Of a DNA stretch of 64,000 nucleotides, positions 22,901 through 35,630 are shown in pieces; the first letter of the stretch is position 1; each line of letters starts with the position of its first letter. Under the pieces are notes generated by a model, which saw nothing but the letters and a program-made list of their open reading frames with translations, searched no databases and had not been told where the DNA came from. A program made the translations under genes and the position numbers. The DNA comes from Phallusia mammillata (taxonomy: Eukaryota), in contig OZ281500.1 in the NCBI GenBank assembly GCA_965637545.1, forward strand, positions 10,044,001 to 10,108,000, given 5' to 3'.

Positions 22901-25900
22901 GTTATCAGCAAGCAACCGGTCACGTGCCTGTGACGCCAAAACGCGATTCGACGGAAAAAGGTGGAAAACTCAAGTTTAAAAGGTAAAAGTCAAAATGAAA
23001 TTAAAAAGGTTGTATTTGGCAACTTGGAGAATAAATTTTTACGGGTTCCCTTCCCTGAAGGGGACACATATTGTTTTTATTCGTGTTTTTTTTTTCTTGT
23101 TTCTTTTTTCTGTCCAACGCTGGTTCGTAACGCTCGTTTGGTCAAGAAAAAGTGCTTAAAAAAGCCCAAAGGAGTAATTCACTGGTTTACAACTGCAGCG
23201 ATTTAATGCATCGCGGGAGATCGCTGCTTGACGCGTGCACAGGCGTTTTACGAGGCAGTCTTTTTGATGATTAGACATCAGTGCAGTAATTCTATGTGGT
23301 TTAATTATAAGTTAACACGCGTATTTTCAGTTTTAGCAAAGGTTTTGTATCTTATAAGTGATTAAAACGATATTTCGGTATTTTACCTTTCAGGCAAACG
23401 TTGTTGATTAACATGAAGGTAAAAAAATACATGTTTTCCAAAGATGCAATAAAAAAGTATTATACGGTCATTGACAAGTTGGCCGCCTTAGGACAACTGA
23501 AGGTCAACTTGTAGGAAACGCAGAACACAGTTGAGAATGATTTAGCTTCTTTATTTTTTACACATATACTCCAGAAACAATACGTAAGAAAATATAAACA
23601 AACATGGGTTGGGAGAAACGTTCTCGTTAATCACTAAGGACTGCGTGCAATTGAAAACCGTGTCAAAAGATCTTGAAACGGTCGTTCGGCGACTACACCG
23701 CGATAGGCTACTGAAGAATAATTAATTTATATGAAAATAATGATGCAAAAAGAATACGGACACAACTTTTAGTTGTGGTAATGCTTTCTAATAATTTGTC
23801 CTCAAGAATCTAAAAATAACCGAAACATTCGTTTACTGTAAATCCGCACAAACACGAGTGTGGGGACCCATTCGTTTTTGTTTGCAAAAACAATCATATA
23901 TTTAGATCAAATGATGTGTATAGCAAATTGTTAAATATCGTATAAAATCCATAAAATGGAAGTATATCAGAAAGCCACCTTCTAGTTTTTAAATCATAAT
24001 GATCAGAACTACAAGTGCAAAGCATAGAAATACAAAGAGCAAGGCAGGATGTAATTTGTTTCTCCTGTTATCCCAGCCAAACCCCAATTCAATTGTCACT
24101 GATCCAAAAGCAGCAGAATTGACATTGGACCTAATGTGACACCATTCGTTTCCGCAGACCGTTTTTTAAGCGATCCAACCGGCCACCTGCCAGCGGATCG
24201 GACTTGGACGAACAAAATGAAGGGAGCAACAACAGCAGTGGATGCGACGATGTTGGGAAATCTGAAGCAGACGACAAACTGACGATGTTAGAAAGGGGAC
24301 AAAGTTTTGAAAAGGTAAGATTCCTATGAAGCTTTACGGGCGGTACACATGACACGGAGTGGTTGAAAATTTGCAACCGACCAAGGACTGAACTTTTAAA
24401 TGCTATTCCATACTTATATGTCAATCCGACTATGATGTCCATTTGTACGTATTAAGCTGTAATGATTATCCACAACATCGAGCTAAAATTGAAAAAAGTC
24501 AGCTTGATTTTTTGTTGCATAATTACACATCACCGTGAAGTTTTACATGGAACAGCCCAGGTTTTAGACTTATTTTTTCCACGCAGGAGAGGATCACAGG
24601 TGACGTTTCGTCCTCTTCCATGTGGTCCCTTGGAAACAGCGAAGCTGCAGCTGGAATGCGATCTATGTCTTTCACTGAAGACGATCTTCACGATATACTT
24701 CAGCCAAGCGACCGCGCATCACCGCAGTCAAGTCGAAGCAATGCATCAATTACTCCTCAGCTTGAATCGGAAAAGTCTCAATCCGCACACAGCTCCATTC
24801 CCGATCTGTTTGACGATCACGTGTTTAACGAAGGAAAGGTGAATCATGACGAGGTATCGGTGACGCAATCATCAGACTCCGGTGTTTGCGTGGACAACTT
24901 CTGCTTCTCGCCTCGGCCGTCTAAAGACGTCGTGAAAAGACGCGGTGGTTTTAGTTTGAAACAAACAGTTGAAAGCACGCCAAATCAAACGGAGGTTGAA
25001 GGCGTAAGACGGAATAGTGACTTAGCATCAGTTAACGATAGCAAATCTGCAAGCACTGACTCGTTGCTGAGTACGGACGAGGACAGCACAGTTTTGACAA
25101 CGGGTCCCAGTAACACAGCTGTTTGCCCACCCTACAAGGAAGCGCCAGTGTTCACCTCAAAAATGAGCGTAAAGTTTACTGCAAACTTGAGCAACAACAA
25201 CAACAATAATAACAATAACAACAGTACAAATGTTGGAACTGCAATCCATGCAACCCAGTTTGTCCGACGTTCCAGCCAAGTCATACGTCTTTGCGACAAC
25301 AACACTAATACAACTGTCGCTGAGCAACAAGAAGCTTCAACAACATATGAAACAAAGCGTAGCGAGGCCTCGAACTATTCCGAGTCCAAGATCCAACCGA
25401 CAGCACAAGGAAGCAACCTACGAACACGAAACAGACTACCAAGTAGCCTTAGCCCGCGCCTTCAGCGACAGTACGGTGCTTCAGCCACTGGAAGCACACC
25501 GGTGCGGACCAGAACACGTGTAAGAGCAAACAATGTAAATAATGGTGAAGGTTTCAATGAAAAGGAAGTTGACGACATCGTGGGGAAAAGAATAAGAAAC
25601 ACAAACGGATTAAATCGGGAACAAAAGCAACAGAGCCAGTATATGGGCGAAACAATTCTAGCTGAAACTGTACCAACGATCGAAAACGCTTCGATTTCGC
25701 TAAAAGCAACCACTCACCGGCCTACGCAACAATATACACCCAATACTGCCAATCCATCAGCCTATAGAACGAGATATGGGAGACGTTACAGCAAAGATGA
25801 TTTATCTATTTCAAGCAAACCAAACAGCAGCGTCTCCAAGTGGACAGCCTCGGGGCTGATACCGAGAAACATTAACCTGAACTCATCGTACAACGGTGGT

Positions 25901-25981
25901 CAGTTTATCGCTGACCGATCTGCAAATCATTTGCAAAGCGTTCGCGACGATCAAAGTAGACTTCCCGAGACCTGGGTGTGA
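4948..25981 (+). CDS. ARHGAP6: Rho GTPase-activating protein, ARHGAP6/ARHGAP36 family (longest isoform span)
   Basis: Isoform A exons 4948-6604, 7168-7573, 10643-10733. Common exons 18022-18178, 18409-18495, 18740-19004, 19284-19434, 20261-20450, 20524-20579, 21047-21197, 21368-21516, 21816-21923, 22126-22212, 22407-22507, 22647-22982, 24158-24314, 24587-25981. All introns are GT-AG and phase-consistent. Motifs: [15 protein letters not shown] (ARHGAP6/36 N-region), VFGIPL, arginine finger [74 protein letters not shown]-terminal ETWV. Confidence 0.92.
12670..13998 (+). CDS. Alternative first coding exon B of the ARHGAP6/36-like gene (443 codons, Ser/Arg-rich)
   Basis: Long ORF from ATG 12670 to a strong phase-0 donor (GGG|gtaagt), compatible with the phase-0 acceptor at 18022. 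Confidence 0.7.
14987..15235 (+). CDS. Alternative first coding exon C of the ARHGAP6/36-like gene (83 codons)
   Basis: ATG 14987 to phase-0 donor AAC|gtatgt. Confidence 0.6.
16382..16990 (+). CDS. Alternative first coding exon D of the ARHGAP6/36-like gene (203 codons)
   Basis: ATG 16382 in a 256-codon ORF that contains a phase-0 donor AGG|gtaaat after 16990. Confidence 0.6.
17458..17541 (+). CDS. Alternative short first coding exon E of the ARHGAP6/36-like gene ([28 protein letters not shown])
   Basis: ATG 17458 to phase-0 donor TCG|gtaaga, 480 nt before the common acceptor. Confidence 0.45.
19487..19969. mobile_element. hAT-type MITE (Ac-like TIR TAGGGATGTACCGAAT...ATTCGGTACATCACTA) in a RhoGAP intron
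   Basis: Terminal inverted repeats, subterminal CCGAAT/ATTCGG arrays and a perfect 8-bp TSD GTTTAAAG. A second copy lies at 49319-49809. Confidence 0.9.
25192..25222 (+). repeat. (AAC/AAT)n coding microsatellite giving poly-Asn in the RhoGAP tail
   Basis: Run of about 10 Asn codons. A shorter run lies at ~22738-22761. Confidence 0.8.
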
Positions 25982-28719
25982 GACTCTTGCAAAGCGTTTT
26001 CTTTTTTTTTCTCTTATTCATAGACTCTTTATTCATATTGTTCTAATTTCTATGTGCAACGTGAAAAGTACCTTGCGTAAAATGCCGATGAGCTGAACCT
26101 ATCTGTACACAAAAGACAAGGTGCTATGGTGTGGAAACACTGTCCGTTGCGCGGGTCTGCAGCATGGGCAGCATCATTGGTTATGCTTTGTGTTTTTTTG
26201 CGTCTGTGTTTTTTCTCCTACGCTTGGACGCTTTCGGTTTGGTCGCCCACTTGATTTTTTTATGCTCATTCACTATCTGTTTCTTCATTCTCCCACTGTT
26301 CCATTTACCAACTCATATAAATGTTGCAAAGTAAAAAAATGTCAAATTTTGTCAATACAATTCGTGTGTCAGGCAACTTGTTAAGTCAAAAAAATAGTTT
26401 CTGGCCACTTTGTGGGTTTAAGTGCTAATCAATAATTTACCCCGCACTGACAACCACACATAATTAAGAGTGTAATACCAACTAAGGAACAAATGGAATT
26501 ACCAGTTGGTGTAGAAAAAATCTCCATGTTGAAGACAGGATGTAAATGCATGGCCCCTTCTAAAAGAGAAAAATTTTACTTCAAAAATTTGATTTCGAGA
26601 GATTCTAAATATGGAAGTTCTTCAAAGTAATTGGCTTGACCGCAAAATTGCTGCACAGTGGATGTAACCCGACGTACTTTGTTGTGACGTTTTTATCTCC
26701 GACAAATCACACGCCACTATTATATGTCGCACTGCGCTCCTAAAGGCTGTAATTAACCTAACCAAAAATCCTTGCGCAACGGAAACCACGACTAAACTTT
26801 GTCAAATCCACTATGTGGTATTTTGATATGTACCCTTCGAGCTGCGCATTAAATTCAAATCACACGCTCGCACACCTTTTTGACAATCCACAAAAATGTC
26901 AAGGCGAGTACGTTAGCAAGAAACGCTAGCAGACTGGATGGACTTCGTGGCATGGAGTTAATTTGGGTGACAAACATGAACGATCATACAAGTAATAAAG
27001 AATATAGAATCGGATTACGAACACGCCTTGACATGCGGTAAGGGCACGCCGGCCCAGCGGCGGGTTTTATCTGATTGAGATGATTGCCTATCGCGAGTAT
27101 TATTGAGCCAAAAAACGGTAGGTTTTACCGGGTCAATTGTACCCTAAAGGTAAAGAGTCTAAATTAGAACCGTATGATAACTTAACTCCTGTACATGGAC
27201 GGAAAAAGTTATGATCATTGCGTTTTTGCAATCTTTTCTGTTGAAATCAGATTCTAAGTCTCGTATTCGAATAAACTCGAGAAAAATGTAGCGCAGTTAA
27301 GTTGGTAATTTTGTTTCCAATTAGCATTGCCTAGTTTCGTGTAGAGCGGTGGTTACAATGAACACAAGTCATAGTTGGAAACAAGAAGGGCCATTTTATT
27401 TTTTTAGTTTGTATCTCACAAGATGACATCGTCAAGCATCGACAGAAAGCAACAGAATCAAATTGCTATGAAGTATCATCTGGATCACATTTCACGTGGT
27501 CTTTTATGTTAATCTTTAAATTGCGATCTGTCCAACGAAGCAAGGAATCCCTTATTAAAGGGTGGTTGCTTAGTCTGACTGGTTTTGTTCGGTGATAACT
27601 AGCTGCCAATTGTGCGTCGCTTATACCAAACACGAGAAATGTAACGGTTATACCACGAGCGACGGCCGAAAGGGGGGTTATTTGTTGGAATGCTTCTGGT
27701 CCATTGAGCAGAAAACAAAAGCGTCGCTACGTAAGCAGATACGGGTCAGTACTCGATGTTCAGCAAAGTTTAAGAATCCACGAAATGTCGCCGGTCGGTT
27801 TACAGTTTCAACGGTGCGTAAAGCTACGTTGAATAGAGACAGGTAACAAGCGATGTACCAGTCAAATATTTTTACGACCCAGTTCGACATTTGGTCAGCA
27901 TCGCACGAGGTGAACTTTTCATTGCTTGAACACTGCGCAGGTGTTGTGTTTCTCATGCTAGTATAGAGTGATCTCCAGCCAGCCATAAACATTGCAGTAT
28001 TCGGAAAGTACATTTCAGCGTTTGTATCTCACGTTGCTTTTAGCAGTATTGAACCGTCTGCAGCTAATATCAGATCGAGTTAAACGATGGACAAACGCGA
28101 ATGATATTTCCAATCAAACAATGCATAACTTGGCATATGTTGATTGGGTTTTTGCGCTCAAATAAAACTAATGTTAACAGGGTCGATTGGCAACAGTAAA
28201 CGTGTCTCCACACAAGTACATGCGAGGCATATAGTTTAAGATTATTTTATGACATAAATTAAGGTTGGTGAGTCATTGCTACAATGTATAATTACGTATT
28301 GCAGTCAACGTCAATTTATACCTATACCGTCAATGTAGCACTTGCTTGAGGCGAAACGTCAGTGTGTGATACCCGTTGTGGTTATATTGGTTTAACCTTT
28401 TTTATGCACCCGTGGACAGGCGGGCATAGTTGAGCGCCGCCCTCGGCCAAGCAACAGGTTTATTTGTTGAGGCTAGCGAAGATGCTAGGTCAATATTTGA
28501 CTGATTTTGATACCTCCTTTGTATTTCTAGCTAATCTGTTTTAGACCATACATGTTACATTCCATTAGCATGGATTTTTAAGACAGGATAACAAAATGTT
28601 ACACAGTCAGGATTGGGAAATTTACACCTGAACAACAACTGTAGACAAGCAAAGTTTTCTACAATGCCAACTACGAAGCGAAAATAGACACCTGTTAAGC
28701 AAATCACTGGCAGTCAAGG

Positions 28720-31700
28720 ATGAACTGGAAAACATACCGCCGTGTCCGCAAAGGACTTTTGTTTCTTGTGCTTTCGTTCGTATTTTTATCTGTATGCGTT
28801 CGAATTGTTGAACACACGGACCTAGCAAGGCATGTAATACGCAATAGTAAGCAATTAAGTCCGAACTTGAAATCTCAACAAACCAAGCACTATGTCGAAG
28901 CAGATAACAATATCAACTATGACAAAGGTGTAAACTTGACTACAAACAATGATCTTCATTTACGCAACGTTTCTCCAAAAAATAAACATACCATAGTAGT
29001 ATCGACAGTCCGGCAACATGCAACTGTGGAAAGAAACAGAACGGCTACGAATACAAGAAACACTACGGCTACGAATACAAATGATGTAACAACCAAGAAG
29101 GATGACAATTCGAAGATTAAGGAAAACGTTGACAAGCACAACATAGAGACAAATGAACAGTTTATGAATCGAATGAAGATAAGAATGGACGAGAGAAGAA
29201 AATACACCAAGGAAATGTGTGACAAACTGGGTATGTTTATGAGATGTGAACCGCAGCCTACGTTTACGTAACATAAAACGAAAGCTTCAGGCCCATAGAA
29301 AGACTCATCGATACTGGTCCATGTATTTTGAAGGCATTATTGGTTTGATTTAGTGGGTTTCAGTTTTTATCTCACTTCATTATTTTTATCTCAGTTTTTT
29401 TTGTCAAAGTTAGCATTTGTTTACATTTTAGGAATAAAGAAAAATAACGTCACGTACGAAGCGTGGCACTTATCGCTACCCACGCCGCGTCCGTGGTTTT
29501 TGAAATCAGACAAGTATCCCCTGATCTACTGCGAAATTCCCAAATCCGGAAGCACTAATTGGAAGAGGGTCATGATGGTGATGAACGGGTTGGCTAACAG
29601 CACTTCAAGCATCAAGCAGGTGACGATTATTAGCAAATGTTTGCATTATTGACCGATAAAGTGGCTGTTGTAATGAAACAATATCAAGTGTTTAACGAGA
29701 GCGTTAAGCTAAAATATACATAACGGTTTTATCAGTTCATATATGAAACATTTACAATAACTTTCGGCATAAATTTAAGTTTTTATAAAATGCTGTATAC
29801 TTGCGCTAAAATACTTCAGGAGTCTGTTTGCTTTGTCACGGGTCACTTACTCGTTTCATCGGGTAATTTTCTGGGTGTTGAATGTAGCCACAAAACGTTG
29901 AGAGCGATTTTAACCTTTTTCCCGTACTGCTTTTAAACGTGTATGGAATTTTGCTTCGTCTTTTGGCTACTTAAGTCATAAGTTTTGGTTATGAACGGTA
30001 CACTTTTCGGGTTTTGCTCGGGCTGAGTTCAGGCTTCGGTTTAAATAAAACGAGCATTAATCTTCAGAGGTTTTATATATGTTGGTGTTTTGGTTTAGGA
30101 ATTAATTATCATGCATCGTTCAGCGTTTGGAGGTTACAAACATCTAACTGATTTTTTACACACCTTGCCCTTCGATACCTAATTGCAGTCTCTCGACAAC
30201 TCTCATGTTTAGTATAATGCAATAAGTAAATGTGAGGTAAAACCGCTCGAAAAGGAAAATGCCTAATATTATGAAACCTTTTGTTTTGCAACAGGGAAAA
30301 GCACATGCCGTTAACATCGGTTGGGTAAATACAAATCCAAACACTACGCAACGTCAAAAGTACTTAAAATCGCTTAAGATGATGATTGTACGAGACCCAT
30401 TCGAGCGACTAACGTCAGCTTATCTGGACAAAGTTGCCTACAAGAAAAGTATTAACGCTTCAGTATTTGGACGATTTTCGTATGAAGTTGCCACAACATA
30501 TGGAAAATCAAACGAGAGTTTTACACCAGGTACGTGCTTTCCATAATAAGTTAGATAAGATTCAATGTCCGTTTTCTTGCACACTTCAGTAGGAAAATCG
30601 TCATTATAAGCTGGATCGTTTCTACTTACATAATGCATCCATAATTTTGTTGTTTACAGAAAACGGTATTCATCGAGTTACAGCTTGTTCATTTGAAGTT
30701 AGAGTGCTCAAATGCAAAAAGCCGAATCATGTAATAAAAGTACATGACGCAATGTTTGGGAGACAGGACGATTCAACGTGAGTGAAATAGGAATATAAAC
30801 GTACAGACTGAAAAAAAAATTCTATCGCCAACTTCATTGCTCCAGTGCTAAGTTTGTCGAACATGGCAACCTTTTCTACACAAGCAAAATATTTAAACGT
30901 CAGTTGGTTCAAACCTCGTCGGGGTCTGTATTCGAATGTTAAAAAATAAGGGGCGTTTTTTTCATAGTTTTTGCATAAATAATAATATTTCTCACTAACT
31001 TATAAGTCAAAATTACGCCAAAATAATGACACACAAAAGATACGTCCACCGTTTCCATCTTATCTTTCCTGGTGGCAAGGACACAAAGTTGTCTAAACCA
31101 ACCATGCATGCTCTTCCACAAACTTCTTGAACATGGTATTACCCATTTGCATCGATGTTACAGGTGTATGCAAAACTACGAAGGCAAAGAAGCAGTAAAC
31201 ATGCGTCCTTGTTCGTCAAAAAACGCATTGTTAATAGCTTCCCAGTTATGCGATGGAAAGCAGAAGTGCGAAGTTGTTGGGTCGCCTGTGGTGTTCGGTC
31301 ACTTGCAAGGGTGTGGAAATGTCCCAAAATATCTACAGATTGACTATCACTGTGTTGGTATGTAGGTTCAGTAAATAGTGGTAGAAGGGTTGCATTTTGT
31401 TTCAGTATATTATACACAGGGTTGGTTGTGATGTTCAAATACAGAATTGGTGCTGTTGTTTTTATCTCTTCAGTTTGTTTACAAACCAAAACAAATGCAG
31501 TAACATTTGGTGTTGAAATTTCAGATAGATCTGTCGAAAAAAACGTCACAGTTTGTGATAGAAAAAGGAAGACAGTCAAGTGTCCGGTAGGCTCAGAAAT
31601 TCGGGTGATGTCGGCATTTTTTGGTCGGCTAGAAACTACCACGTAAGTTCACCAATCCGCCATATAAAAACGTAATTTGTAGGATAATATAAAACCTTAT

Positions 31701-33327
31701 TTTGCAGATGTCGAAAGCGAGCACGAATAGCCAACGTCCATTGCGATGCCGAAACAGCAACTGCGGCGGCAATGGTTGCGTGTCACAAGAAAAACTTTTG
31801 TGTGTTGGAAGCATCAAAAACATGGATCCAGAGCGATCCTTGTCCCTCTACAGACAAATATCTTACGATGTGGTATCACTGTGAGCGTAAGTTTGCTAAA
31901 CATAAGTTAACACTGTAAATACATTTCCTTAAACCCCCACTAAAGCAGGGGTAGGCAACCTTTTTGCACTGCGGACCGTTTTCACAAAACAAGCATTTCA
32001 GCTAAAAAAATCATACTGCCCGGTAACGAACTACTCGCGGCCCGGTGCCGGACCGGCGGTTGCCGACCACTGCACAAAAGCATAACTTGGCCCAACAAAT
32101 TTTCCGTGTGGTTACCGTTTCAAATTTTTGCCAAATATTGGGCTCTTTGCCATTGAGTTTTAATATTCTGTGGCGTGGCGAAAAGTACAAGACAACGTTT
32201 TCATTACAGCTTCCACCACACAGGAAACTTCAGAAGAAGTCTCAAATTCGATTTCTTCTCCACCTACAATACTTAAAATGCCTAAAAACATTTTTAAGTA
32301 AGTGCCATGAGATGCCTTTCTGACACCAACGTTAAGTTGATATTTTAAACAAATAAAAAAGGTTTGCGCCACAAATCAGATTTACTATATGGTAATACAG
32401 CGGATAAAGGCGTTAAAGATTTTTTATCATGGCATATACTAAACTACAAACTTATTCTGCATCAGAAAGTATCCAAAGCATGCCACGTTCAACGAGTTTG
32501 TGTCATATCTGACCGATCCTGGAAACGCAGTGGTGACAAAGGACAAAATAGATCATGGATCGGGTTCGTTACGGTCTACCAACGTTCGTCACTGGCAAAA
32601 CTTCCACACATTGTGTTATCCATGTCATATCCAATACGACGTTATTGCCCATATCGAAACAATAGAGGAAGACGCAAGGTAAGAAGTACTGATGCACCAA
32701 ACCGCCTAAAAAAGTTCGGGCCCAAACCGAATGTTCGGCCAGCAGTCCGGTATATTTCTACCGAATCTGACCGAACCTAAGATTTACTTTCGTATGAATG
32801 GTTTGAACTGATTCTTACATTGTTACTGCAAGTAAGTGCTCAAGCCACAACAAAATTTACAATATAAAGGCTAAACAAAATACTTTGCAGACAGCATGAC
32901 TTGTAAAAATTGCAATACAGTTATCGTTAGTGCCATCTAGTGGACCACTTTTTAATACATTTAATTTGCAATTCTGTGGTCACATCCATACGTATTTTTT
33001 TCCTGGATGTACAGTAAAACTATGAACCTTATATTGCATGTTATCTTCGTACTTATACACGATAATAATAAGAACATATTTTGTCGTTTTAGGTATGTTT
33101 TGAATATGATTGGGGCACCGAAAAACCTCAAGTATCCGGAAGGATACAATACCGCAGGACACAGCTCAACAAATTCTTCAATAGTACATGACGCTTTTGC
33201 CAAGCTCGAACCTCGTCAGATCGAAAAACTGATCGAACTGTACAAAATAGACTACCAACTATTTCAATATAACTTTCCGCGTTTAAACAAACAAAACCTT
33301 GACAGTGTTATAAATATGCGTACATGA
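28720..33327 (+). CDS. Type II membrane carbohydrate sulfotransferase (Sulfotransfer_2, CHST8-14/HNK-1ST family) with two SUEL lectin domains inserted in the catalytic domain
   Basis: Exons 28720-29230, 29432-29619, 30295-30529, 30660-30777, 31164-31357, 31525-31642, 31708-31886, 32210-32297, 32466-32678, 33093-33327 join in one frame (intron phases 1,0,1,2,1,2,1,2,2). N-terminal TM (GLLFLVLSFVFLSVCV), 5'-PSB YCEIPKSGSTNWK, 3'-PB VRDPFERLTSAY, TFNEFVSYL, HWQNFHTLCYPCHIQYDVIAHIETIEEDA, LYKIDYQLFQY. Confidence 0.9.
30660..31357 (+). CDS. SUEL/rhamnose-binding-type lectin domain 1 (two exons) inside sulfotransferase 1
   Basis: ACSFEVRVLKCKKPNHVIKVHDAMFGRQDDSTC...CSSKNALLIASQLCDGKQKCEV...QGCGNVPKYLQIDYHC. 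It has 8 Cys plus the A-x-F/Y-GR and KYL motifs. Confidence 0.88.
31525..31886 (+). CDS. SUEL/rhamnose-binding-type lectin domain 2 (two exons) inside sulfotransferase 1
   Basis: VCDRKRKTVKCPVGSEIRVMSAFFGRLETTTC...CDAETATAAAMVACHKKNFCVLEAS...DPCPSTDKYLTMWYHC. It has 8 Cys plus the AFFGR and DPC..KYL motifs. Confidence 0.88.
31946..32072. mobile_element. Small hAT-type MITE in a sulfotransferase intron
   Basis: TIRs CAGGGGTAGGCAACC / GGTTGCCGACCACTG. Flanks CACTAAAG and CACAAAAG match at 7 of 8 positions as a TSD. Confidence 0.75.
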
Positions 33328-33806
33328 TATATTAGACGACAACACGCATGCAACACCTGCACATTTATGCACAATATTGACTTGTAAGACCGTGCGATAA
33401 TTCTTTTTTGCAATTTTCGTGTTTGATGTATGCAAACAACTCACAAGTCTCTTCAAATGTATAGATCTTAATTGTCGGCTCTAAACGCCTCCAGAAAAAC
33501 TGCTGACATGCCTCATCAACAACCAATTGTTCTTCAACGTATTCCATTCTTCTTTCTTTGTCGGGTCACGAACGTTTAGCGCGCAAAAAAATGGTTGTGA
33601 TTGTGGACTTCTTTTATTGCAATTATGGACTAAATTTAGAAGCGGTATCTTATTAATCCAGGTCACAAACAGGAATTACTGCAAATGGCAGACGGTGGTC
33701 GCAAACAAGCGCTTATAAAGGTCCTGGTATGTCCGTTTTTTTAAACGCTTTGTTTTATCATCCACGGATTGTATAAATTTAAGAAGCAGATACAATAAAA
33801 AAGAGC

Positions 33807-35630
33807 ATGCAAGGAGCGCGAGTTAGAAAACGATGGGTAGCATATTTTGTAATTATCGTTGCGCAAAGTATCTGGTTGGTATTTGTGCCAAGAAAAATAA
33901 AAAATTGGAAAGAATCAGGTAGATGCGTCTGCTTCAACTGTGAATCGAGGTAGTGTGATTTGTGTCTATTTATTGTGTAGCTGAAGTGGACAATTTGCGA
34001 CAAGGACCGTACTTACAAAGAATGGTGAACATGAAGCAGAGATGTAAACAACGACATTTCGATTATGCTAGCATTCTTTCAAAACATTTCAAATTCGACG
34101 ACAGCTTGAAACTTGTAATGTGTGAAAATCCAAAGGTTTGTAAAAATATTTCCAAGCTCATGGCACTTGTTATTTGTAAAGTTTTGCTTATATCAATTCA
34201 GCCTTTGACAAAGTTACGGACCGTCTCATCAGTTTTGTAGTACAGTACAACAATTATGTACGCATAACTTTTGATATATTTAACCTTACTGACGTTCGCA
34301 GGTAGCAAGTACAACTTGGCAAATATTATTTTTGAAGCTTGGAGGATTTAAAAAAGAGATCACACAAAAAATGAGAAAAGAGTGGGAATATCATGAAATA
34401 CCAAACAAATATTTTGAACAGTAAGGGGGCCTCTTAAGCAAACTATAGGCTTCATTAAGCTTGTAAGTTATGTAATACAAATCATTCTGTCAATAGATTA
34501 GATAGTGAGGGAGAGGCTTTGAGGCGGTTAAGTGAATACACAACATTCTTTGCAATGAGACATCCATTTGAAAGGCTGGTCTCTGCATATGTCGACAAGT
34601 TTTCCTCAAAGAGCCGATGGAACGCGTACAAACAAAGGGAGGGGAGAAAAATTGCCGAAAGTCAATTAGGCTCAGAAATTTATGGAATAAACACGTAAGA
34701 TTTTGTAGTTTATTTACAATAAATGAACAATATTTTTCGGAATAGGTACTAACACAGGAACTCACATTACATCGGTTTAATAATTTCCGCTAGGTGGCGC
34801 AAAAAGTTTTTGAACGCAAATTGTGTAAAAATGCTGACGGTTGGGGCTATTACGGCTGGACTAGACTTTCTTAATAATATTCAAAATATAATCAACTAGA
34901 ATTCCAGTACCTAACTTACGACTTACTTCTTAACTCTATTCCAGTTACACAATTATTTTGAAAATTGCGCCCTTTGTGAAATTATTAAACCTACGTACCG
35001 TGAGTTCCTGTATTAGTAGCTCTACCTAGTACCTCTACCATATCTTTCCGTCCCGTTGATAAACAACTATTTTTTTAGACACTGGCTTTCAAAAACTCCA
35101 ACCCCGTTGATTTTGCGTTCACCGGCTTTTCTGAAACTTTCAGCACCAAATAAAAAACAAATGCTAGAGAAAATCTTTGTTCTCAAGTCCGGAGAAATAT
35201 CTTTTCAACAATTTGTCAAGTAAGTCATAACAATATCAGTAAACCTTCAGCGAAAACTTGTTCAACGTGTTTCTTGCTTAGCTATATCGTTGACAACTAT
35301 CAAAGTAAGGAACAAATTAAAACAATGGATCATCACTGGATACCACAAGTCTACAACTGCATGCCATGCTATGTGAACTACAGCTTCGTGATTCGTTTCG
35401 AAAGCCTTAGTACCGATTCGCAGTATTTACTCAACTACTTACAAAGAAAAACGACAACCAATCTAACGTTTCCCCTAACTGGACCTCCACAAACCAGTCA
35501 GAATATCACGCAAAAGATGTTCCAACTTTTACCCGAGCAACAAGTGGACAAGCTTCGCAAAATTTATGCTGACGACTTTTATGTTTTTGATTATGATCTG
35601 TACTTGTATCAAGGATACAAAGGTACTTGA
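33807..35630 (+). CDS. Second tandem carbohydrate sulfotransferase (Sulfotransfer_2 family), no lectin insert
   Basis: Exons 33807-33918, 33981-34135, 34302-34420, 34497-34694, 35079-35219, 35282-35630. TM WVAYFVIIVAQSIWLVFV, 5'-PSB MCENPKVASTTW, 3'-PB MRHPFERLVSAYVDKF, SFQQFV, DHHWIPQVYNCMPCYVNYSFVIRFESL, IYADDFYVFDY. Confidence 0.88.

What the first reader, a model, noticed from the sequence alone, without database searches (positions are those of the whole stretch)
30530..32209. Lectin insert is a phase-symmetric cassette allowing 0, 1, 2 or a hybrid lectin
Seen: each SUEL domain is bounded by phase-1 introns and split by a phase-2 intron at the same place (after FGR-x4, inside the Thr codon before the third Cys). 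Both N-half exons are 118 nt. Skipping both modules (30529 to 32210), either module, or joining 30777 to 31708 (N-half of SUEL1 with C-half of SUEL2) all keep the frame. Established: 1-1 symmetric modules are the signature of exon shuffling. Inference: the module arrived by exon shuffling and then duplicated in tandem, and alternative splicing could tune acceptor specificity.
Basis: partly seen in the sequence, partly recalled or inferred. Interest (0 to 1): 0.75.

Follow-up and report, generated by a model that had tools for sequence, protein, structure and literature searches.

The report
Lectin exon cassette inside a sulfotransferase gene
A sea-squirt sugar-sulfating enzyme gene carries two sugar-binding (SUEL) domains on four extra exons that keep the reading frame; they look like an old exon-shuffling insertion that is always spliced in, not a splicing switch.

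Summary
Four exons (30660-30777, 31164-31357, 31525-31642, 31708-31886) encode two SUEL lectin domains between two Sulfotransfer_2 exons.

One 3341-nt spliced RNA contig joins all ten exons in that order. Partial contigs from two other studies repeat six of the nine junctions. No skipping or hybrid junction appeared in four runs, but contigs drop rare forms.

The layout is not special to this gene. Other SUEL modules in the same genome have the same phase-2 intron: YGR, four residues, two bases, intron, one base, Cys. This held in 27 of 30 by script and 28 of 29 by reading. All 21 internal modules end in phase 1.

Three paralogous sulfotransferases have one phase-1 intron at the recipient site. 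An orthologue on metagenome contigs, and the closest named relative (Clavelina), have no SUEL exons.

- **Exon shuffling into an old phase-1 intron:** well supported.
- **Recent tandem duplication:** not supported. The two modules are 26-33% identical and very diverged, though one clade is not rejected.
- **Splicing switch:** no evidence.

The scan had already noted this gene (s1-554118) and a similar SUEL swap elsewhere in this genome (s1-410968).

The parts
28720..29230 (+). Exon 1: start codon, short cytoplasmic tail, hydrophobic signal anchor and stem region; ends in phase 1
   Evidence: ORF and sequence. Joint 29229/30 to 29431/2 in X4, X5 and X9. The type II anchor is my reading of the peptide; no tool tested it.
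29432..29619 (+). Exon 2: 5'-PSB (PAPS-binding) motif region of Sulfotransfer_2; phase 1 to 0
   Evidence: Own-genome Pfam hit at C7:10073497-10073595, which is window 29497-29595, profile 3-35, E 1.8e-6. Joints.
30295..30529 (+). Exon Ea: 3'-PB motif (RDPFERLTSAY); phase 0 to 1; donor of the recipient phase-1 intron
   Evidence: Pfam Sulfotransfer_2 2.5e-9, profile 64-109. Joint to 30660 in X4 and X9.
30660..30777 (+). SUEL module 1, N-half exon (118 nt, phase 1 to 2); Cys1, Cys2, FGR
   Evidence: Pfam 0.038. Custom N-half HMM 3.1e-4. Joints in X4 and X9.
31164..31357 (+). SUEL module 1, C-half exon (194 nt, phase 2 to 1); Cys3 to Cys8; DPC replaced by LQGC; KYL kept
   Evidence: Pfam SUEL_Lectin 1.4e-9, 38.6 bits against a cut-off of 31.4. 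Joints in X4 and X5.
31525..31642 (+). SUEL module 2, N-half exon (118 nt, phase 1 to 2)
   Evidence: No Pfam hit. Custom N-half HMM 1.3e-7. Joints in X4, X5 and X9.
31708..31886 (+). SUEL module 2, C-half exon (179 nt, phase 2 to 1); DPC and KYL kept
   Evidence: Pfam SUEL_Lectin 3.8e-10, 40.4 bits. Joints in X4, X5 and X9.
32210..32297 (+). Linker exon (88 nt, phase 1 to 2); Ser/Thr/Pro-rich; no family match
   Evidence: No Pfam hit. Joints 31886 to 32210 and 32297 to 32466 in X4 and X9.
32466..32678 (+). Exon Eb: Sulfotransfer_2 core (HW..LC.PC..YD); 213 nt, phase 2 to 2
   Evidence: Pfam 4.4e-8, profile 132-186. Joints. 68% identical to the orthologue's exon.
33093..33327 (+). Last coding exon, including the stop codon; the total coding sequence is 2079 nt, or 692 codons
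   Evidence: Own-genome Pfam hit with profile 185-252 at window 33085-33273. Joint 32676/8 to 33091/3 in X4.

Best explanation
This is a Golgi-type (type II membrane) CHST11-like carbohydrate sulfotransferase gene of a sea squirt. Two SUEL (rhamnose/galactose-binding lectin type) domains, each on two exons, sit in an old phase-1 intron of the sulfotransferase family. That intron lies between the 3'-PB exon and the next catalytic exon.

The phase pattern 1-2-1 is how nearly every SUEL module in this genome is built. The frame-preserving skips are therefore a historical by-product of exon shuffling, not a device.

The four exons are constitutively spliced into the mRNA (shown). The insertion is old, or the modules evolved fast afterwards, and it is absent from the nearest relatives sampled (shown).

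Inferred, not shown: the disulfide-rich pair folds in the Golgi lumen as a loop insertion of the catalytic domain. There it either holds the enzyme on a glycan substrate, as lectin domains do in other glycan-modifying enzymes, or it has been turned to another binding role, because residues invariant elsewhere are changed.
For: **Gene model and inclusion.**
- One 3341-nt contig of X4 joins all ten exons.
- X5 and X9 repeat six of the nine junctions.
- Each cassette exon is seen in at least two runs from at least two studies.

**Domains.** Pfam on single exons and custom HMMs.

**Generic layout in the genome.**
- There are 77 SUEL hits in the genome. None starts before profile position 10, and by my count 62 of 77 start at positions 20-26.
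- 27 of 30 C-half exons start 'AG, one base, Cys codon'.
- In 28 of 29 distinct loci the upstream exon ends 'YGR, 4 residues, 2 bases, GT' (my reading).
- 21 of 29 end in a phase-1 donor, 7 in a stop and 1 is unresolved.
- 22 of 24 have a phase-1 acceptor candidate that gives a 115-127-nt N-half exon.

**Recipient intron.** Paralogues L042, L046 and L047 have a phase-1 donor and a phase-1 acceptor at this site. L043 has a phase-1 acceptor.

**Absence in relatives.**
- L048, L049 and L050 carry ex1, ex2 (56%), Ea (54%), Eb (68%) and the last exon (38%) in the same order. They have no SUEL match better than E 1.7 in six frames.
- The Clavelina lepadiformis protein P0004 (312 aa) has Sulfotransfer_2 only.
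- 0 of the 51 relatives I scanned carry SUEL.
- No other Sulfotransfer_2 hit of the genome lies near a SUEL hit.

**Intact fold.** Both modules keep 8 Cys. No variant was listed in the four cassette exons in the runs that cover them (table 3).
Against: - All RNA evidence is assembled contigs. These drop rare isoforms and cannot show levels, tissues or stages.
- X1 gave only unspliced pieces.
- The orthologue's species is unknown and its transcripts were not seen. Its Ea donor could be phase 1 (same place as here) or phase 2, so the state of the intron at the time of insertion is not fixed.
- Its Eb acceptor, like ours, is phase 2. This fits loss of the cassette as well as gain.
- Sugar binding is doubtful. 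Both modules have FGR where 24 of 24 other modules have YGR. Both lack the Glu that follows Cys1 in 24 of 24 others. Module 1 lacks DPC.
Confidence: 0.75

Rival explanations
1. One reading: regulated alternative splicing yields isoforms with no lectin, one lectin, two lectins or a hybrid (N half of module 1 with C half of module 2), and these change acceptor preference.
For: All four alternative joins keep the frame and create no stop. A hybrid would keep all 8 Cys in register. Contigs cannot exclude minor forms.
Against: - No such junction appeared in 4 runs from 3 studies.
- The X4 contig runs unbroken through all exons at depth 58.7.
- Symmetry is generic to SUEL modules here. The core exon Eb is also symmetric (213 nt).
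- The two halves of a hybrid would come from modules only 26-33% identical.
Confidence: 0.08
2. The two modules arrived together as a ready-made two-domain block from a multi-SUEL gene, rather than as one module that later duplicated in place.
For: - The genome holds dense arrays of SUEL modules about 1 kb apart (C4:5.77-5.81 Mb, C3:28.09-28.13 Mb).
- S1C and S2C rank 26th and 23rd of 27 for each other.
- S2C pairs weakly with L012 (support 67/28), not with S1C.
Against: - S1 and S2 share states seen in none of the other modules compared. FGR and the missing Glu after Cys1 were checked against 24 N halves. YHC before the end was checked against 26 C halves.
- Both N-half exons are 118 nt.
- One clade is not rejected (p-AU 0.437).
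- The shared states could also be convergent in a shared new role.
Confidence: 0.35
3. The cassette is ancestral to this orthologue group and was lost in the metagenome species (L048-L050).
For: L049 has a good phase-1 donor at exactly our position (YGK, 7 residues, 1 base) and a phase-2 Eb acceptor at our position. This layout needs a linker-type exon, as ours does. One candidate exon lies at L049 8322-8397. The modules are very diverged, which suggests age.
Against: It needs two events instead of one. Clavelina's relatives and all 48 scanned family members lack SUEL. No SUEL remnant at all is found in L049's 2.4-kb intron.
Confidence: 0.15

Closest known systems
Class 1-1 exon-shuffling modules (Patthy's rule; recalled, no paper read here)
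   Same: The module is flanked by phase-1 introns. It is found with the same intron layout in unrelated genes of one genome. It is inserted into a phase-1 intron of the recipient.
   Different: The module lands inside a catalytic domain rather than between domains or at an end. It also carries an internal phase-2 intron that travels with it.
Fish rhamnose-binding lectin genes, e.g. snakehead SHL (PMC3269628, section 7; passages read)
   Same: Tandem RBL/SUEL domains of about 35% identity, each on its own set of exons. That review proposes duplication and/or exon shuffling.
   Different: SHL uses three exons per domain, and another gene there (Rsp) uses one exon. Here there are two exons per domain genome-wide. 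Those fish genes are secreted lectins, not enzymes.
Polypeptide GalNAc-transferases with a ricin-type lectin domain (recalled)
   Same: A Golgi type II glycan-modifying enzyme that carries its own lectin domain to steer substrate choice. This is the closest model for how the protein may work.
   Different: A different enzyme class and a different lectin fold. There the lectin is appended at the C terminus, not inserted within the catalytic domain. Binding is not shown here.
CHST11-like carbohydrate sulfotransferases (Sulfotransfer_2, PF03567), e.g. Clavelina lepadiformis P0004
   Same: Same family and motifs. P0004 is 52% identical to our protein over exon Eb.
   Different: P0004 is 312 aa with no lectin domain. 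Ours is 692 codons with about 203 residues of SUEL and about 30 of linker in the variable stretch.
SUEL head swapped onto an adhesion GPCR in this same genome
   Same: The same module type joined at a phase-1 junction in the same genome.
   Different: There it replaces an N-terminal head domain. Here it is an internal insertion in an enzyme.

Membership tests
SUEL / rhamnose-binding lectin domain (PF02140) | Profile match above the curated cut-off | tested here: met
   The C-half exons alone score 38.6 and 40.4 bits against a cut-off of 31.4. The N halves are recognised by a custom HMM at 3.1e-4 and 1.3e-7.
SUEL / rhamnose-binding lectin domain (PF02140) | Eight conserved cysteines | tested here: met
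   There are 2 Cys in each N half and 6 in each C half, in register with other modules.
SUEL / rhamnose-binding lectin domain (PF02140) | YGR and DPC..KYL motifs (motif names recalled; conservation measured here) | tested here: not met
   Both modules have FGR where 24 of 24 others have YGR. The Glu after Cys1 is absent in both but present in 24 of 24 others. DPC is kept in module 2 only. KYL is kept in both.
SUEL / rhamnose-binding lectin domain (PF02140) | Binds L-rhamnose or D-galactosides | not testable with these tools
   This needs the protein and a glycan array.
Sulfotransfer_2 (PF03567) Golgi carbohydrate sulfotransferase | Profile match over the whole domain, including the 5'-PSB and 3'-PB regions | tested here: met
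   Exon-by-exon matches: profile 3-35, 64-109, 132-186 (117-190 in the read-through hit) and 185-252. The joined protein was not searched.
Sulfotransfer_2 (PF03567) Golgi carbohydrate sulfotransferase | Type II membrane topology | not tested
   A hydrophobic stretch follows a basic N terminus in exon 1, by my reading. No predictor was run.
Exon-shuffled class 1-1 module | Both flanking introns in phase 1, and the same layout in unrelated genes | tested here: met
   for this gene. All 21 internal modules elsewhere end in phase 1. 22 of 24 have a fitting phase-1 acceptor candidate.
Exon-shuffled class 1-1 module | Homologues without the module have a phase-1 intron at the site | tested here: met
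   Three paralogues have both sides in phase 1. The orthologue lacks SUEL exons, but its donor phase is ambiguous.
Alternatively spliced cassette | Transcripts with and without the exons | tested here: not met
   Only inclusion junctions were seen in X4, X5 and X9. X1 was unspliced. These are contigs only, so rare forms are not excluded.

The most novel reading that the evidence does not exclude
The divergent SUEL pair is a working glycan-binding insert that steers a CHST11-like sulfotransferase. Tissue- or stage-specific splicing that removes one module, both modules, or S1C plus S2N (the hybrid) retunes which glycans are sulfated. That would be a splice-programmable, lectin-guided sulfotransferase.
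Probability: 0.07. Interest if true: 0.7.

Novelty: new variant of a known kind. Interest (0 to 1): 0.4.

Why it matters
It is a clean, datable case of exon shuffling that placed a whole two-domain lectin block inside a catalytic domain rather than beside it. The mRNA is expressed and a close orthologue lacks the block.

If the lectins bind glycans, this would be a sulfotransferase with its own substrate-targeting lectin. I found no such protein among the 51 relatives scanned or in the paper searches.

As a splicing switch it has no support so far. The value lies in the evolutionary mechanism and in a testable enzyme design.

Tried and rejected
- **Nested or separate lectin gene in an intron:** rejected. 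One contig splices the SUEL exons to the sulfotransferase exons on both sides.
- **Recent tandem duplication:** rejected on identity.
- **Finding a donor:** no module is closer than 47% over 37 residues or 32-41% over 50-58 residues. The tree is unresolved, with only a weak S2C-L012 pairing.
- **Close paralogue of the host gene:** none. The best match is 55% over 38 residues.
- **The neighbouring sulfotransferase** (about 34477-35630) has different intron phases (my reading) and is not informative for the site.
- **PDB by sequence:** Ea gave only chance hits and the family profile A1 gave none, so I could not map the insertion onto a solved fold.
- **Synteny between the window and L048/L049:** nothing beyond the gene itself.
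- **Linker exon in L049:** four frame-fitting candidates, one with a GTAAGT donor, none provable.
- **Papers.**
  - 'sulfotransferase' plus 'SUEL' gave 32 papers, with the 15 listed irrelevant by title.
  - 'rhamnose-binding lectin' plus 'sulfotransferase' plus 'domain' gave 2 papers, both irrelevant.
  - 'carbohydrate sulfotransferase', 'lectin domain', 'ascidian' gave 114 papers, with none of the 12 listed on such a fusion.
  - These were listings only. Supplements were closed and not consulted.
- **Proteins scanned:** of the 123 hits I scanned 51 with Pfam. The other 72, mostly fragments under 280 aa, were not scanned.
- **Species:** I did not verify the species name.
Full report
**What is there.** Region 30530-32209 lies inside a ten-exon gene on the + strand. 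Reading the DNA and translating each exon on its own gives these exons:

| Exon | Coordinates | Length (nt) | Phase |
|---|---|---|---|
| ex1 | 28720-29230 | 511 | ends in 1 |
| ex2 | 29432-29619 | 188 | 1 to 0 |
| Ea | 30295-30529 | 235 | 0 to 1 |
| S1N | 30660-30777 | 118 | 1 to 2 |
| S1C | 31164-31357 | 194 | 2 to 1 |
| S2N | 31525-31642 | 118 | 1 to 2 |
| S2C | 31708-31886 | 179 | 2 to 1 |
| linker | 32210-32297 | 88 | 1 to 2 |
| Eb | 32466-32678 | 213 | 2 to 2 |
| last | 33093-33327 | 235 | - |

The coding sequence totals 2079 nt, or 692 codons. Pfam on single exons puts Ea on Sulfotransfer_2 positions 64-109 and Eb on 132-186. It puts S1C (1.4e-9) and S2C (3.8e-10) on SUEL_Lectin. S1N is marginal (0.038) and S2N gives nothing. 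HMMs built from other SUEL half-exons of this genome recognise all four. Both modules keep eight cysteines.

**Is the model real?** Yes. Four runs were laid on 28700-33400.
- Run X4 has one 3341-nt contig that joins all ten exons at exactly these GT..AG borders. Its internal gaps of 119 and 88 letters match S2N and the linker.
- X5 and X9, from two other studies, repeat six of the nine junctions.
- Each of the four cassette exons is seen in at least two runs.
- X1 gave only unspliced pieces that cover introns.
- No junction skipping a module and no 30777>31708 hybrid junction was listed.

These are assembled contigs, which drop rare variants, so this shows presence of the full form and not absence of others.

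Module 1 is 312 nt, module 2 is 297 nt, both are 609 nt, and S1C plus S2N is 312 nt. The new junction codons would not be stops. Symmetry is a weak sign of regulation, though: the core catalytic exon Eb is also symmetric (213 nt, 2-2).

**The layout is generic.**
- A Pfam search of the whole genome found 77 SUEL matches. None starts before profile position 10, and by my count 62 start at positions 20-26. The domain is therefore split at the same place almost everywhere.
- In the 30 loci fetched, 27 C-half exons begin 'AG, one base, Cys codon' by script. L014 also fits on its second Cys by eye.
- In 28 of 29 distinct loci the upstream exon ends 'YGR, four residues, two bases (mostly AC), GT' (my reading). 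L017 was not resolved.
- After the last Cys, 21 loci have a phase-1 donor, 7 have a stop codon (terminal domains) and 1 has neither.
- I passed 24 of the 28 resolved N-half exons. Of these, 22 have a phase-1 acceptor candidate that gives an exon of 115-127 nt. L005 and L012 only allow other lengths. These acceptors are candidates, not RNA-proven.

**The recipient site.** No other Sulfotransfer_2 hit in the genome lies near a SUEL hit, and Eb has no close paralogue. In paralogues L042, L046 and L047 the Ea-like exon ends, and the Eb-like exon starts, in phase 1 a few codons from our positions. L043 has a phase-1 acceptor. The family therefore has an old phase-1 intron here, as the shuffling rule requires.

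In our gene the Eb acceptor is phase 2 and the 88-nt linker exon bridges 1 to 2. I cannot say how that arose.

**Relatives.**
- An all-library search with Eb gave only two close hits, both single-exon fragments at 70% identity.
- One led to metagenome contigs L048-L050. These carry ex1, ex2 (56%), Ea (54%), Eb (68%) and the last exon (38%) in order. That is closer than any paralogue in our genome, so I take it as the orthologue of an unknown species.
- Its 2.4-kb Ea-Eb interval, and the whole 15 kb in six frames, has no SUEL match better than E 1.7. The same HMMs find all four half-exons in the window.
- Its Eb acceptor is phase 2 at our position. Its Ea has a good phase-1 donor at exactly our position and a weaker phase-2 donor seven codons earlier. 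So either a linker-type exon exists there (one candidate) or Ea joins Eb directly.
- The nearest full-length named relative is a 312-aa carbohydrate sulfotransferase of the ascidian Clavelina lepadiformis. Its further kin are named CHST11-like, and it has Sulfotransfer_2 only.
- Of the 51 proteins I scanned out of the 123 hits, 48 have Sulfotransfer_2 only, 3 are unrelated, and none has SUEL.

Gain in our lineage is the simplest reading. Loss in the other species is not excluded.

**One insertion plus duplication, or a block?**
- S1 and S2 are 11 of 33 (N halves) and 15 of 57 (C halves) identical. Each ranks 2nd and 8th of 25 (N halves) and 26th and 23rd of 27 (C halves) in the other's list.
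- Neither finds the other at E <= 0.01.
- In a tree of 28 C halves both have end branches of about 6.1 against a median of 0.1. S2C pairs weakly with L012, and a joint S1-S2 clade is not rejected (p-AU 0.437).
- They do share states that none of the other modules compared show: FGR for YGR and no Glu after Cys1 (24 other N halves), and YHC before the end (26 other C halves).

A recent duplication is excluded. An ancient one, or entry as a pair, both remain open.

**How it probably works.** The mRNA encodes a type II membrane sulfotransferase with intact PAPS-binding motifs. It has about 203 residues of lectin folds plus a Ser/Thr/Pro-rich linker in a stretch that is variable in the family. I infer a lumenal loop insertion that binds glycan, in the manner of lectin-bearing GalNAc-transferases (recalled). 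The changed residues mean the ligand may differ from rhamnose or galactose, or binding may be lost.

**Literature.** A review (PMC3269628, section 7, passages read) reports three exons per RBL domain in a fish lectin gene and suggests duplication and/or exon shuffling. Three searches found no paper on a sulfotransferase with such a domain (listings only).

**Earlier notes of this scan.** They name the same gene (s1-554118). They report a SUEL head swapped at a phase-1 junction elsewhere in this genome (s1-410968). They call the genome a sea squirt, Phallusia mammillata (s1-405476). I confirmed only that the nearest named relative is ascidian.

**Verdict.** The shuffling origin is well supported. 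Tandem duplication is unresolved. The splicing switch is unsupported.

Noticed in passing
window 31945-32073 (intron between S2C and the linker exon): A 16-nt inverted repeat (88% complementary) with 97 nt between the arms. Contigs of X4 and X9 break here with loose ends and a back-joint (tables 5c and 7). It looks like a small MITE-type repeat present elsewhere in the genome.
   Followed up: partly
window about 33960-35630: A second Sulfotransfer_2 gene lies directly downstream on the same strand, without lectin exons. Its 3'-PB exon ends in phase 2 and a middle exon is 2-2, so its intron pattern differs from the neighbour's.
   Followed up: partly
window 30660-31886: Both SUEL modules replace residues that are invariant in the 24 other modules compared: Tyr of YGR becomes Phe, and the Glu after Cys1 becomes Ser or Asp. 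Module 1 also lacks DPC. This suggests an altered or lost sugar site.
   Followed up: partly
window 32564 and 29461: Two variants in RNA contigs change the protein. G>A at 32564 gives Gly to Asp in the variable loop of Eb (X1, X4, X5). G>C at 29461 gives Ala to Pro in exon 2 (X4, X9). None was listed in the four SUEL exons.
   Followed up: no
run X1 on window 29778-33298: All six contigs of this presumed RNA run are unspliced and cover introns, so it holds pre-mRNA or genomic DNA.
   Followed up: no
G000 C4:5.77-5.81 Mb and C3:28.09-28.13 Mb: Dense arrays of SUEL modules about 1 kb apart, some in near-identical duplicated blocks (for example L007 = L008 and L010 = L011). This indicates recent segmental duplication of multi-lectin genes.
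   Followed up: no
window 24620-25981: A long open frame of 453 aa rich in Ser, Asn and Thr, with an Asn run, lies upstream on the + strand. It was not examined.
   Followed up: no
L049 8300-8900: Overlapping long open frames on both strands inside the orthologue's Ea-Eb intron. This is probably a repeat element.
   Followed up: no
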